DNA of 64,000 nt from Euprymna scolopes (GCA_053919585.1 CM132786.1), one strand, 5' to 3'; positions 11,935 through 62,521 are shown, numbered from the stretch's first letter. Notes: generated by a model not told the origin, from the letters alone. Program-made: numbers and translations.

Positions 11935-13413
11935 GATGCTTCTGTAGTTCCAACGAGAGAAAAAAATGTATATTTAAAAGAGTGTAGCCATCAACAATTG
12001 TGGGTTTTTTAAAGGTTTTCATCATATTTTTATTTTAAAATATTTTTATAACGCGTACTGACATTAGGGTGTGCTCTCTTCAGATGTTTTCGTAATAAGT
12101 TTTTCTTTAAAATGGGAGTTTGGAAAGTTATTTTTACCTCCGCTGATACTAAATGTGTTTTTCAGAGTTATGTGTGGTCTCAGACATTATGTCTCCAACC
12201 GTAAGTGTTCAAAGTTTCCGGTCAAAGTTAGATTCAAAGAGGGCGCTTTTCGTCCATTTGGTGAAGGTTTTTATGTTTTTTTAGGGTTTTTTAAGGACTT
12301 TCTTTCCCCATGTACAGCACACACTCACACACAATCACACACGCTTACATATGTATACATGTACATGTACACATGCACACGCATGTAGGCACACACACAT
12401 ACACACACGCATATACATAGAAATATATGCAGGAGCATACATATATACATACCCACCTACACACTCACACTCACACATCCACCACTAACATGTCAGGCAC
12501 AAATTGTTAATTATTTTTATTTATTTATTTTTATTTTATTTTTTATATTTTTATTTTTTTTATTTTATTTTTCCCCAACCAAAACTCGCATGTATATATG
12601 CGCTTAATCATTCAGACATAAGTACACGCACACACACACACACACAAGTAAGATGGAGAACAGGTAGGAGGAGATACATATACACATTCATACGTACATA
12701 CACATATATATACACATACATTTATGTGCATACACACTCACAAATATCCACATGCTATGTAGGCACATGCACATACACACACACATGCACACACATAGAG
12801 AGATATATGCAGGGGCTCACACATACGCATATATCCATATCCACACGAACACATTTACCCACTTATACATATGCATACATATGTATATACATACACACAC
12901 ATACAGATGCGTATACATTCATCCACTCATATATATATATGGACACATGCACCCACAATCACACATGCACATACATATTCATGCATCGCACCTTATGTAT
13001 ATATTTGTTGAAGTGTTATTTCTTTTCTAATCCAAGCACATATGCATACATGTGTTCGGTCACCCAAACATAAGTGCACATACACACACAAACAAGATGG
13101 ATCATAGATAACAGATGATATATATATACACACACACGCATACACAATCATATGTATACACTCACATACACACACATACATACATGCACACATGTGCGAA
13201 CATGTGCGAACATACATTTCTAATTGTTTGTTTAGAGAAATGGTACTGTACCGGGTATGGACGCGCGCACCCGTGAAAGTGTGCGCGTGCTTTATTGTGC
13301 TTCTTTTGTTTCGTGTGTGAGGGTGCACATTTACCCCAGTATGCATGCATGTAAGTGTATTCTGTGTTCTGCCTATTTATGTGTATAATTATGGAGAGAT
13401 GTTTAAGGCGGGG

Positions 13414-60549: not shown

Positions 60550-60612
<63 letters not shown>

Positions 60613-60619
<7 letters not shown>

Positions 60620-60989
60620 CTGATTATTTTAACCGATATTAAGGTTAACGCCTCCGCCTCGAAGATCCGGTGTTCTTCTTAGAAAGTCACCCATTTTTTT
60701 ATTTGACACATTTTTTTTATTTATTCATATATTATTTGTAAAAAATTATTATTTTTAAAAACAATAATCTACGGACCCGCGTGCTTCGGAGCCCTACTCC
60801 TCTTCGGCGTAGCTTGACTGTTGTTGGGTGTCGAACACCGAAGCTTATGTATTTCAGTTCAGTGTCCTAACCCATGAAGCTATGATGTCATAGACAATTT
60901 ACTGTTTAGTTTTTTTTTTATATCGTTCATCTTTTTGCGTAGTTTTTGTTGTTGATTTTTTAAAAACGATAGCAAGGTTAACGTCTACG

Positions 60990-60992
<3 letters not shown>
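60613..60992 (-). mobile_element. tRNA-headed, hammerhead-containing short element (monomer about 332 bp plus 47-bp terminal direct repeat) in (TA)n
   Basis: 60613-60659 resembles 60945-60992. tRNA-like segment 60815-60889 with A and B boxes. Hammerhead at 60769-60812. Confidence 0.78.
60769..60812 (-). ncRNA. Type I hammerhead, two core substitutions
   Basis: ctacg-CCGAAGA-GGAG-taggg-CTCC-GAAG-cacgcggg-TC-cgtag: perfect stems I and II and a GUC triplet. Confidence 0.75.
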
Positions 60993-61026
<34 letters not shown>

Positions 61027-61259
61027 TTATTTATGCATATATATATATATATATATGCGCCACCTTTTTTGGCAATTTTATTAGCTCCACTTCACAGCAA
61101 CAATTGATCAGAATTTAATAAATGAATGCTGGTTGGAAAGGTATTGATCTGAATTGTATATTGTGCTAAGTTACATTTGCCCAAATGTCGACCAATAAGA
61201 GGATCATCTATCATCCAAATATTTCAATCCTAGTCACTTGGATTCCAGAGTCTTGCATA

Positions 61260-62018: not shown

Positions 62019-62140
62019 TTACTCAACTTGGACATGTCACGTTCGTGAAGAAAGAGCTTGTACAGATACGTTATTATTTCTTTATCGTTTATGCATACAT
62101 GTATGTGTATATACAAATATATATATATATTTGTAGAGAT

Positions 62141-62271
62141 CTACATACACTCCTGTTTCGTTCTATCACAACTCATCAGTGCCGCTAGACTAGCACTTCT
62201 CCCAAGCCGAGGACTGAACCTAGAACCATCGCGTTGACAATCATTAGTTCTACTGATCGACCCAAGGGAGC
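62141..62271 (-). mobile_element. tRNA-like head followed by a type I hammerhead (second family)
   Basis: Minus strand: gctcccttgggtcgatcagtaga...ggttcagtcc...gggaga, then cggca-CTGATGA-GTT-gtgatag-AAC-GAAA-caggagtg-TA-tgtag. Confidence 0.75.
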
Positions 62272-62521
62272 GGCGCCCGTAAATTATCTCGCCAAATATC
62301 TATTTAAACAAACATCCGTCCACCAATTTTACAGTGCTCTAACCGCTTGTTTATATACAAGGAGCGAGCGTCGCATTTTTCAACCAATAAAGTAGCGGGT
62401 GAGATTACTTACGACAGTGCTCTACCCAAAGAGGGGGTTACAATATCTGTAGTCATTTTTCGGGGGGTACAGACTTTAATAATGAATAAATACAAACCAA
62501 AAAACATTTTAAAAAATTAAA

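What the first reader, a model, noticed from the sequence alone, without database searches (positions are those of the whole stretch)
60613..60992. tRNA head + hammerhead + terminal direct repeat: candidate Pol III-driven retrozyme
Seen: on the minus strand a tRNA-like segment of about 75 nt (A-box-like TAGCTTCATGG, B-box-like GTTCGACACC, ends GAC.../...GTCA) is followed within a few nt by a type I hammerhead with perfect stem I (ctacg/cgtag), perfect stem II (GGAG/CTCC), near-palindromic stem III and a GUC site. The unit is about a 1.14-mer of a 332-bp monomer and both ends abut (TA)n. The duplicated 47 bp is neither at the tRNA 5' end nor at the cleavage site. Established: ordinary SINEs start at the tRNA head and end in a LINE-like tail, whereas metazoan non-LTR retrozymes are short hammerhead-bearing tandem units thought to form circular RNAs and use PLE enzymes; the Schistosoma SM-alpha repeat is the nearest analogue I know. 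Inference: this is a non-coding mobile RNA with its own Pol III promoter, copied from a circular or concatemeric template by PLE reverse transcriptase. This copy has two core substitutions and is probably inactive.
Basis: partly seen in the sequence, partly recalled or inferred. Interest (0 to 1): 0.88.

Follow-up and report, generated by a model that had tools for sequence, protein, structure and literature searches.

The report
Dead tRNA-headed hammerhead retroelement copy
This is an old, inactive copy of a short non-coding jumping element present in a few thousand copies in a large mollusc genome; it joins a tRNA-gene-like head to a self-cutting hammerhead RNA motif and was inserted the way Penelope-like retrotransposons insert, a kind already known from blood flukes and mussels.

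Summary
On the minus strand of 60613-60992 lie a tRNA-derived head, a type I hammerhead with two core substitutions, a 48-nt terminal repeat and (TA)n on both sides.

The unit is one decayed member of a dispersed family of about 3,000 first-look candidates. In most sampled copies the hammerhead core is canonical. The canonical 44-nt ribozyme occurs 770 times with up to 2 mismatches, and 0 times in the reversed control.

Copies have a fixed 3' end at one of two AU-rich sites abutting (TA)n. Their 5' ends are variable and they span 0.25-2.7 units. Some sit next to inverted partial copies. These are the known insertion scars of Penelope-like elements, which are abundant in this genome.

So [quoted passage not shown] is supported. 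"Pol III-driven" is not shown. The A and B boxes are present with canonical spacing, but a conserved T5 run follows the ribozyme directly, and copies do not start at the tRNA 5' end. PolyA RNA reads showed only sparse, two-stranded, read-through-like signal.

No partner Penelope element was found. The closest known are schistosome SM-alpha and metazoan non-LTR retrozymes. This scan had already noted similar elements elsewhere in this genome.

The parts
60992..61055 (.). (TA)15 + ATAAATAAATAAAT-like stretch + (TA)9: microsatellite on the 5' side of the element
60945..60992 (-). 5'-truncated remnant of an upstream unit (last 48 nt of the 3' domain), which is terminal repeat copy 1
   Evidence: 39/48 identical to 60613-60660
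60890..60944 (-). Leader between the family's 3' terminus and the tRNA-like head; it continues seamlessly from the upstream remnant
60815..60889 (-). tRNA-derived head. Degraded A box at 60872-60882 and degraded B box at 60827-60837. It does not fold as a cloverleaf.
60760..60822 (-). Type I hammerhead with extended helix I (distal AACAGT/ATTGTT). Core at 60769-60812, with the cleavage site 3' of C17 at 60774. Inactive because of U4>C and A15.1>G, plus U16.3>G in helix III.
60757..60761 (-). T5 run directly after the ribozyme (a would-be Pol III terminator). Its preceding TT is part of distal helix I. This copy has a second run, T6, at 60740-60745.
60693..60756 (-). A/T-rich spacer. In other copies this is the site of the second, alternative 3' end.
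60613..60692 (-). 3' domain ending at the family's fixed 3' terminus. Its last 48 nt (60613-60660) are terminal repeat copy 2.
60553..60612 (.). (TA)30 abutting the 3' terminus, as in most family members

Best explanation
What it is: window 60613-60992 (minus strand) is an old, dead insertion of a non-coding retroelement family of a few thousand copies. The unit is 300-332 nt. In order it holds a leader, a tRNA-derived head with A and B boxes, a canonical type I hammerhead, a T5 run, an A/T-rich spacer and a 3' domain with a fixed terminus. The hammerhead has an extended helix I with an internal loop, a 4-5 bp helix II and a short palindromic helix III.

Shown:
- New copies have a fixed 3' end at one of two AU-rich sites joined to (TA)n.
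- Their 5' ends are variable.
- They run seamlessly over more than one unit.
- Some lie beside inverted partial copies.

Inferred:
- They are made by target-primed reverse transcription by a Penelope-like element's reverse transcriptase and GIY-YIG endonuclease, at (TA)n microsatellites.
- The template is a multimeric or circular RNA.
- The hammerhead cuts multimeric transcripts to unit length, and these units could then be ligated into circles.

Unresolved:
- What transcribes the template. The tRNA-type promoter may do so only if the T5 run is read through. Otherwise Pol II or read-through transcription supplies the RNA, and the head is either a relic of the element's origin or makes a separate RNA of about 140 nt.
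For: Family size:
- 3166 and 2994 first-look candidates for the two subfamilies.
- 770 matches to the canonical 44-nt ribozyme with up to 2 mismatches, against 0 for the reversed control.

Ribozyme:
- The core is intact in 16 of 33 units not selected on the ribozyme, and in 16 of 17 units of the younger subfamily.
- All conserved core positions are present. There is a full-length Rfam Hammerhead_1 alignment, though sub-threshold.
- 92% of cells are paired, against 28-48% in slid controls. There are 9 double-change cells against 3.0 +/- 1.6 in shuffles. A subfamily carries GGGG/CCCC in helix II and a GUA site.
- Sister families in RNA reads share helices I and III but have another helix II.

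Insertion pattern (69 arrays):
- 44 arrays end at the 3' terminus and 17 at the spacer site, nearly all on (TA)n.
- 5' phases are spread over the whole unit.
- Lengths run from 73 to 826 nt.
- 15 of 29 arrays picked only by an exact ribozyme exceed one unit.
- Inverted head-to-head copies occur at L032 and L045.

Penelope-like elements:
- They are abundant here: 15395 first-look GIY-YIG candidates, with ORFs up to 806-870 aa.
- Partial tandems, inverted 5'-truncated copies and a (TA)n bias are published traits of these elements (PMC8557442).
- Animal retrozymes have been proposed to be their non-autonomous derivatives (bioRxiv 10.64898/2026.07.22.740005).

Distribution:
- 31-mers of the unit occur in DNA runs of at least 5 other organism codes.
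Against: - No Penelope-like element sharing the 3' domain or the ribozyme was found. Only two such families were sampled.
- Target-site duplications cannot be read in (TA)n. Only one clear 12-bp duplication was seen (L037).
- No RNA evidence for unit-length or circular RNA. Two polyA RNA-seq runs gave 91 and 74 reads. These lay on both strands, 85-87% ran on into unlike sequence, and no ends piled up at the GUC site.
- Go-back joints appeared mostly in contigs, which may be DNA.
- Within-family covariation is modest. Part of it (CG>TG/CA in helix I) can be CpG decay.
- Rfam does not reach its gathering score.
- The samples of copies were chosen by similarity searches, so the phase statistics are not from an unbiased census.
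Confidence: 0.78

Rival explanations
1. The element's own tRNA-type Pol III promoter transcribes tandem source copies into multimers. The hammerhead cuts them, a ligase closes a circle of about 300-330 nt, and a Penelope-like reverse transcriptase copies the circle by rolling-circle synthesis.
For: - A box and B box with the canonical 45-nt spacing. The A box is perfect in subfamily B and the B box is the majority state in both subfamilies.
- No T>=4 run inside the head plus ribozyme in 50 of 50 units.
- The sense strand has 1.27 T>=4 runs per 300 nt against 7.2 A>=4 runs.
- Arrays longer than one unit have seamless junctions.
- One copy starts about 9 nt before the tRNA-like +1 and reads through the T5 run to the 3' terminus (L037).
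- The cleavage-to-cleavage unit folds somewhat better than shuffles (z -2.05).
Against: - A conserved T5 run (T4-T9 in 47 of 50 units) lies directly after the ribozyme. Every unit-length RNA must be transcribed through it.
- 5' ends do not cluster at the tRNA start: 2 of 69 arrays, about the chance level.
- No tRNA call by ARAGORN or Rfam.
- No circle or cleavage ends were seen in the RNA reads, though these were polyA libraries only.
Confidence: 0.3
2. Not an independent family. The units are solo terminal repeats (pLTR pieces) or severely 5'-truncated copies of an autonomous Penelope-like element whose terminal region carries the tRNA-like head and hammerhead.
For: - An earlier scan note (s1-295599) reports a GIY-YIG remnant followed directly by a tRNA-type promoter and a hammerhead elsewhere in this genome.
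- Hammerheads sit in the pLTRs of Penelope-like elements (PMC4209133).
Against: - In the 69 arrays analysed, sequence upstream of a complete unit is another unit joined 3'-terminus-to-leader, an inverted copy, or flank. It is never coding sequence.
- tblastn with Penelope ORFs found no element-adjacent match in the retrozyme loci.
- The two Penelope families sampled have unrelated 3' regions.
Confidence: 0.1
3. An ordinary tRNA-derived SINE mobilised by a LINE, with the hammerhead resemblance incidental.
For: - tRNA-derived head with A and B boxes.
- LINE-type reverse transcriptase genes are present, for example in the window at 19465-21438.
Against: - Copies do not start at the tRNA 5' end.
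- There is no poly(A) or LINE-derived tail. There are partial tandems and inverted copies.
- The ribozyme core is conserved across subfamilies better than its surroundings: 0.93 against about 0.80 between subfamilies.
- It is unrelated to the Ceph-SINE body motifs (PMC5786205).
Confidence: 0.03
4. A minisatellite or satellite spread by recombination, not by retrotransposition.
For: Tandem arrangement. SM-alpha was first described as a satellite.
Against: - Arrays are short, at most 2.7 units, and are dispersed across the chromosome-scale contigs.
- Each has the same 3' terminus and an individual 5' truncation.
Confidence: 0.02

Closest known systems
Schistosoma SM-alpha / Sj-alpha SINE-like elements (Ferbeyre et al. 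1998; Laha et al. 2000; cited in PMC8490949)
   Same: - Non-coding unit of about 330 bp (335 bp in PMC8490949).
- Type I hammerhead inside a SINE-like retroelement with Pol III-type boxes. The boxes are from my own knowledge of Ferbeyre 1998, which I could not read here.
- High copy number, both tandem and dispersed.
   Different: - A different phylum: a mollusc by the run labels, against a flatworm.
- No sequence relation was tested, because no SM-alpha sequence was available.
- Here helix III is short and palindromic.
- Here the 3' end is anchored on (TA)n, and a T5 run follows the ribozyme.
Metazoan non-LTR retrozymes (Cervera and de la Pena 2020, PMC7229834; PMC7761336)
   Same: - Short non-coding units with a type I hammerhead, found in tandem.
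- Known in molluscs (mussel).
- Proposed to be copied from circular RNA and to depend on Penelope-like elements.
   Different: - Those papers report no tRNA-like head or Pol III motif: 0 occurrences of 'Pol III' or 'SINE' in PMC7229834.
- Their circles were shown by northern blot and RNase R. Here no RNA circle is shown.
Hammerheads of Penelope-like element pLTRs (Cervera and de la Pena 2014, PMC4209133; Lunse et al. 2017)
   Same: - Short palindromic helix III that could pair between two copies.
- Association with partial-tandem and inverted insertion structures and with microsatellite targets (PMC8557442).
   Different: - No reverse transcriptase or endonuclease ORF.
- Helices I and II are full-sized, with an internal loop in helix I, so it is not a minimal hammerhead.
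tRNA-derived SINEs of cephalopods (Ceph-SINEs; PMC5786205)
   Same: tRNA-derived head with A and B boxes in a short non-coding retroelement.
   Different: - No CORE/Ceph domain or RTE-derived body or tail.
- Copies do not begin at the tRNA start.
- It carries a ribozyme.

Membership tests
Hammerhead ribozyme, type I | Conserved core C3 U4 G5 A6 N7 G8 A9 ... G12 A13 A14 A15.1 ... U16.1 H17 | tested here: met
   Met by the family's majority state and by 770 genomic matches. Not met by the window copy itself, which has U4>C and A15.1>G.
Hammerhead ribozyme, type I | Three helices around the core, with helix I open (5' and 3' ends in helix I) | tested here: met
   Helix I 5+6 bp, helix II 4-5 bp, helix III 3 bp. 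92% of cells are paired against 28-48% when slid. The Rfam alignment spans model positions 1-45.
Hammerhead ribozyme, type I | Reaches the Rfam Hammerhead_1 gathering score | tested here: not met
   17.4 bits against 34 on a canonical copy. No hit at the gathering threshold in the window or in 20 loci.
Hammerhead ribozyme, type I | Self-cleavage at H17 | not testable with these tools
   No pile-up of read ends at the site in polyA RNA, which is uninformative at 91 and 74 reads.
Metazoan non-LTR retrozyme | Non-coding tandem units, each with a type I hammerhead | tested here: met
   Dimers and trimers have a ribozyme in each unit, for example a 2.7-unit array. The window copy is 1.14 units with one dead ribozyme.
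Metazoan non-LTR retrozyme | Expressed as a unit-length circular RNA | tested here: inconclusive
   Only polyA RNA-seq could be laid. The reads were sparse, two-stranded and read-through-like. Go-back joints were mostly in contigs that may be DNA.
Metazoan non-LTR retrozyme | Co-occurs with Penelope-like elements | tested here: met
   15395 first-look GIY-YIG candidates, with ORFs up to 806-870 aa carrying the GIY...YIG endonuclease motifs of these elements.
Penelope-dependent non-autonomous element | Insertion scars: 5'-truncated partial tandems, adjacent inverted partial copies, microsatellite targets | tested here: met
   compared with the description in PMC8557442.
Penelope-dependent non-autonomous element | Shares its 3' end with an autonomous Penelope-like element of the same genome | tested here: not met
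   No similarity to the 3' regions of the two Penelope families sampled.
tRNA-derived SINE | Internal Pol III promoter: A box and B box at tRNA-like spacing | tested here: met
   A box (one relaxed position) in 36 of 50 units, strict B box in 27 of 50, spacing of 45 nt in 14 of 19 units with both. Both boxes are degraded in the window copy.
tRNA-derived SINE | Copies begin at the tRNA 5' end (the Pol III start) | tested here: not met
   5' phases are spread over the whole unit. Only 2 of 69 are near the tRNA start.
tRNA-derived SINE | 3' tail derived from a partner LINE, or a poly(A) or simple-repeat tail recognised by a LINE | tested here: inconclusive
   The tail is (TA)n. No LINE with a matching 3' end was looked for genome-wide. 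The body lacks the Ceph-SINE motifs (PMC5786205).
tRNA gene or pseudogene | Cloverleaf recognised by tRNA finders | tested here: not met
   ARAGORN finds 0 genes in the window and in 29 loci. There is no Rfam tRNA hit at E up to 10, even in a 156-nt search. The D arm can pair but the acceptor stem cannot, as read directly from the sequence.

The most novel reading that the evidence does not exclude
The tRNA-type head really is a working Pol III promoter. If so, decapod-like mollusc genomes would harbour a whole guild of Pol III-promoted, hammerhead-processed, Penelope-mobilised 'SINE-retrozymes' that cycle through small circular RNAs. These genomes are annotated as almost SINE-free (PMC13218726). 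The exact framing of promoter, ribozyme and T5 run would then mean one of two things: regulated terminator read-through, or a separate tRNA-like ribozyme RNA of about 140 nt that acts in trans through the palindromic helix III.
Probability: 0.25. Interest if true: 0.7.

Novelty: new member of a known kind. Interest (0 to 1): 0.42.

Why it matters
The family gives a clean genomic record of how hammerhead-bearing non-coding elements are copied. The 3' ends are fixed at AU-rich sites on (TA)n, the 5' ends are variable, and copies run for more than one unit. That argues for internal priming on a multimeric or circular template by Penelope-type machinery.

It also shows that large cephalopod-like genomes described as nearly SINE-free contain thousands of tRNA-headed short retroelements. 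Standard repeat classifiers leave these as 'unknown'.

The conflict between a well-kept Pol III promoter and a terminator-like T5 run right after the ribozyme is a concrete, testable question: which polymerase feeds retrozymes?

The window copy itself is a fossil and has no likely function.

Tried and rejected
- **ARAGORN** on the window and 29 loci found no tRNA.
- **Rfam at the gathering score** gave only 5S-like hits.
- **Rfam at E up to 10** on the window copy and on four loci gave only microsatellite-driven miRNA noise. A 156-nt search was needed to see the sub-threshold Hammerhead_1 alignment.
- **A strict hammerhead descriptor of my own** found nothing in the window. This copy is mutated, and the second element at 62150-62195 has a weak helix I.
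- **Thermodynamic folding of the 63-nt ribozyme** is not better than shuffles (z -0.64). I rejected this as a criterion.
- **Partner search.** The GIY-YIG Pfam search gave two Penelope families whose 3' regions are unrelated to the element. L031, where the ribozyme is followed by foreign sequence, turned out to be another repeat inserted there. tblastn with Penelope ORFs against all retrozyme loci gave no adjacent match.
- **An excess of 5' ends just after the cleavage site.** 14 of 68 fall in the 40-59 phase bin, and about 5 lie within -2 to +5 nt of the site. I looked at these copy by copy. Most sit in the A/T-rich spacer next to (TA)n or at inverted-copy junctions, so I do not claim a cleavage footprint.
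- **Ceph-SINE identity** was rejected on body motifs.
- **RNA reads** gave no support for circles or cleavage ends. This was polyA RNA only and is not evidence against them.

Full report
**1. Observation**

- A 75-nt tRNA-like stretch lies at 60815-60889, with A-box-like TAGCTTCATGG and B-box-like TGTTCGACACC.
- Six nucleotides later a type I hammerhead begins (core 60769-60812).
- Helix I is CTACG/CGTAG and helix II is GGAG/CTCC. Helix III is short and nearly palindromic, and there is a GUC site.
- The unit is 380 nt, which is 1.14 x 332. The two 48-nt ends are 39/48 identical.
- (TA)30 lies on one side, and (TA)15 and (TA)9 on the other.
- The core carries U4>C and A15.1>G, plus U16.3>G in helix III, so this copy cannot be an active ribozyme.
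- ARAGORN and Rfam call nothing here.

**2. It is one member of a large family**

The genome is 5.9 Gb in 925 contigs. Run labels point to a mollusc. The size and the 46 or more chromosome-scale contigs fit a decapod cephalopod, but that is my inference only.
- The unit gave 3166 first-look candidates, with scored copies 77-86% identical.
- A younger subfamily B has a 300-nt unit. It gave 2994 candidates, with copies 90-94% alike.
- The window copy belongs to the older subfamily A. Among the copies aligned it is the most diverged from the others in that subfamily.
- There is only one copy in the 64-kb window.

**3. The hammerhead is real at family level**

- The majority state reads CUGAAGA ... 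GAAA, with A15.1-U16.1 and a GUC site.
- The canonical 44-nt ribozyme occurs 770 times in the genome with up to 2 mismatches. The reversed control occurs 0 times.
- The core is intact in 16 of 33 units not selected on the ribozyme, and in 16 of 17 subfamily B units.
- Helix I continues beyond an internal loop (CAAG/AUU) into a 6-bp distal stem, AACAGU/ACUGUU. This explains why the flanks of the core are conserved.
- On 66 distinct copies, 92% of cells pair, against 28-48% when partners are slid. There are 9 double-change cells against 3.0 +/- 1.6 in shuffles (1 of 500).
- The A-U to G-C change in helix II marks a subfamily that also has a GUA site. The C-G to U-A changes in helix I could be CpG decay, so I give them little weight.
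- Loose ends of RNA reads reveal sister ribozymes with the same helices I and III but a quite different helix II.
- In a 156-nt search, Rfam Hammerhead_1 aligns a canonical copy over the whole model, but at 17.4 bits against a gathering score of 34.
- Helix III (ACA-CGCG-UGU) is part of a perfect 10-nt palindrome. This is the feature that lets the hammerheads of Penelope-like elements act as dimers (PMC4209133; Lunse 2017 as cited in PMC8490949).

**4. The head is tRNA-derived but is not a tRNA**

- Subfamily B has a perfect A box (TRGCNNAGTGG). A perfect B box (GGTTCGANTCC) is the majority state of both subfamilies. The start-to-start spacing is 45 nt.
- A D arm can be drawn, but the acceptor stem cannot. 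Its 3' side has been replaced by distal helix I.
- No tRNA finder accepts any copy.
- The anticodon-loop-like CUGAAAU resembles a Phe(GAA) tRNA. That comparison is from memory and was not tested.

**5. How copies are laid down (69 arrays)**

- 44 arrays end at one terminus, ...AAAAC(C/T)AC(T/G), followed by TA.
- 17 end in the A/T-rich spacer 35-45 nt after the cleavage site.
- Almost all of both classes abut (TA)n. The rest of the unit is not found beyond the (TA)n, so these are true alternative 3' ends.
- 5' ends fall anywhere in the unit.
- Lengths are 73-826 nt. 15 of 29 arrays picked only by an exact ribozyme exceed one unit.
- Junctions between units are seamless, joining 3' terminus to leader with no (TA)n in between.
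- Head-to-head inverted partial copies occur, for example at L032 and L045.
- These are the published hallmarks of insertions by Penelope-like elements: pLTR-like partial tandems, inverted 5'-truncated copies, and a microsatellite bias that includes (TA)n (PMC8557442).
- Such elements are very abundant here. There are 15395 first-look GIY-YIG candidates, with ORFs of 806-870 aa.
- The window copy fits the pattern exactly. It is a full unit preceded by the last 48 nt of an upstream unit, sitting inside a (TA)n tract.

**6. What this says about the template**

- Most arrays run upstream through the would-be Pol III start and the leader into the previous unit.
- The template therefore cannot have been a transcript that began at that unit's own promoter.
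- It was either a multimer or a circle, primed internally at AU-rich sites by the (TA)n target.
- Sequence alone cannot separate the two, because ribozyme cleavage followed by ligation leaves no scar.
- About 5 of 68 5' ends lie within a few nucleotides of the cleavage site, but the surrounding A/T-rich sequence makes this unreliable.

**7. Pol III drive is not shown**

In favour:
- The boxes are present at canonical spacing.
- The sense strand has 1.27 T>=4 runs per 300 nt against 7.2 A>=4 runs.
- There is no T>=4 run inside the head plus ribozyme in 50 of 50 units.
- One copy starts about 9 nt before the tRNA-like +1, has a 12-bp target-site duplication, and reads through to the 3' terminus (L037).

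Against:
- The one conserved T run (T5; T4-T9 in 47 of 50 units) lies directly after the ribozyme. A Pol III transcript would therefore be about 140 nt, and every unit-length RNA must be read through this run.
- 5' ends do not cluster at the tRNA start.

Between subfamilies, the ribozyme and the T5A5 stretch are the best conserved segments (0.93 against about 0.80). However, the subfamily B sample was partly chosen for an exact ribozyme.

**8. RNA**

- Two polyA RNA-seq runs of the same organism code gave only 91 and 74 reads at 85% likeness or better.
- The reads lay on both strands, and 85-87% ran on into unlike sequence. No pile-up of ends was seen.
- Go-back joints were found mostly in contigs of uncertain kind, with one seen in 3 raw reads.
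- This looks like passive read-through. It says nothing about RNAs that are not polyadenylated.
- The cleavage-to-cleavage unit folds moderately better than shuffles (z -2.05).

**9. Distribution**

- 31-mers of the unit are held by DNA runs of at least five other organism codes, at shares of 0.24-0.42.
- Together with 6-14% pairwise divergence between copies, this points to an old family shared by related species.

**10. Comparison with what is known**

- The nearest described things are the schistosome SM-alpha and Sj-alpha SINE-like elements with a type I hammerhead (PMC8490949), and metazoan non-LTR retrozymes (PMC7229834, PMC7761336).
- Retrozymes are now argued to be non-autonomous derivatives of Penelope-like elements (bioRxiv 10.64898/2026.07.22.740005).
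- The retrozyme papers I could read mention no tRNA head.
- The only held paper containing both 'retrozyme' and 'cephalopod' is the Penelope paper PMC8557442.
- The element is not a Ceph-SINE.
- A recent cuttlefish genome paper reports almost no SINEs and many unclassified repeats (PMC13218726). Families like this one would sit among the latter.
- Earlier notes of this scan describe several similar tRNA-head plus hammerhead families in this same genome. My window holds a second, unrelated one at about 62150-62195 on the minus strand.
- Those notes agree with my reading, but they are not independent evidence.

**11. Verdict**

- The feature is real, and the hammerhead-retroelement reading is right.
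- The Penelope-type mechanism is well supported by the insertion scars, but the partner element is unidentified.
- Pol III drive and RNA circles are unproven.
- This copy is dead.
- It is a new member of a known kind.

Noticed in passing
window 30534-30648 (+); L005:2529-2645 (-); L020:1136-1251 (-): 5S rRNA-like sequences scoring 70.5, 46.9 and 42.8 bits. They are probably 5S-derived repeats or pseudogenes, as reported in tens of thousands for a squid genome (PMC6962438).
   Followed up: no
window 19465-21438 (+): Intact 657-aa ORF with an RVT_1 reverse transcriptase domain (E 2.8e-36) and no GIY-YIG motif. It is a LINE-type element, not a Penelope-like one.
   Followed up: partly
window about 13400-15282 (-): Decayed remnant of a Penelope-like reverse transcriptase and endonuclease. 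It is 26% identical over 304 aa to the abundant Penelope ORF, with a YIG-like frame further downstream. It is followed by degenerate GT/CA-rich, microsatellite-like sequence.
   Followed up: partly
window 62131-62310 (-), ribozyme about 62150-62195: A second, unrelated element with the same order of parts: a B-box-like GGTTCAGTCC, then a hammerhead-like CTGATGA...GAAA with a GUA site. Rfam gives Hammerhead_3 at 17 bits, E 0.41. Helix I is weak.
   Followed up: partly
L073 (genome contig C553:29970-33197): The best GIY-YIG hit of the genome is a UvrC-like, bacterial-looking ORF on a small contig. This may be a non-host (symbiont or contaminant) contig in the assembly.
   Followed up: no
L031:1552-1800 (= L085): Another repeat family, with at least 1118 first-look candidates and copies that fold back on themselves as inverted halves. 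It interrupts a retrozyme copy immediately after its ribozyme.
   Followed up: partly
L074-L084 (12 loci around GIY-YIG hits): A dominant and apparently young Penelope-like family. It gave 15395 first-look candidates, many with identical scores. ORFs reach 806-870 aa and copies often lie in inverted pairs. No CTGANGA...GAAA motif occurs within 1.5 kb of the endonuclease. A second family (L077) ends directly in (TA)n.
   Followed up: partly
L037:1374-1630 (-): A family copy that starts about 9 nt before the tRNA-like +1 and ends at the 3' terminus without (TA)n. It is flanked by a 12-bp target-site duplication, AATAGAAATCTA. It has the shape expected of a cDNA of a Pol III-initiated transcript that read through the T5 run.
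   Followed up: partly
RNA reads laid on L058:1378-1677 (loose ends before 1525-1526): Sister hammerhead families sharing helices I and III with this one but with a different helix II (for example CTGATGAGAGGTAATGACCTT before CGAAAC). Several ribozyme lineages therefore coexist in this genome.
   Followed up: no
run list for L058:1378-1677: A 'microbial mat metagenome' DNA run holds 27% of the unit's sampled 31-mers. This is odd for a mollusc repeat and may reflect animal DNA in that sample.
   Followed up: no
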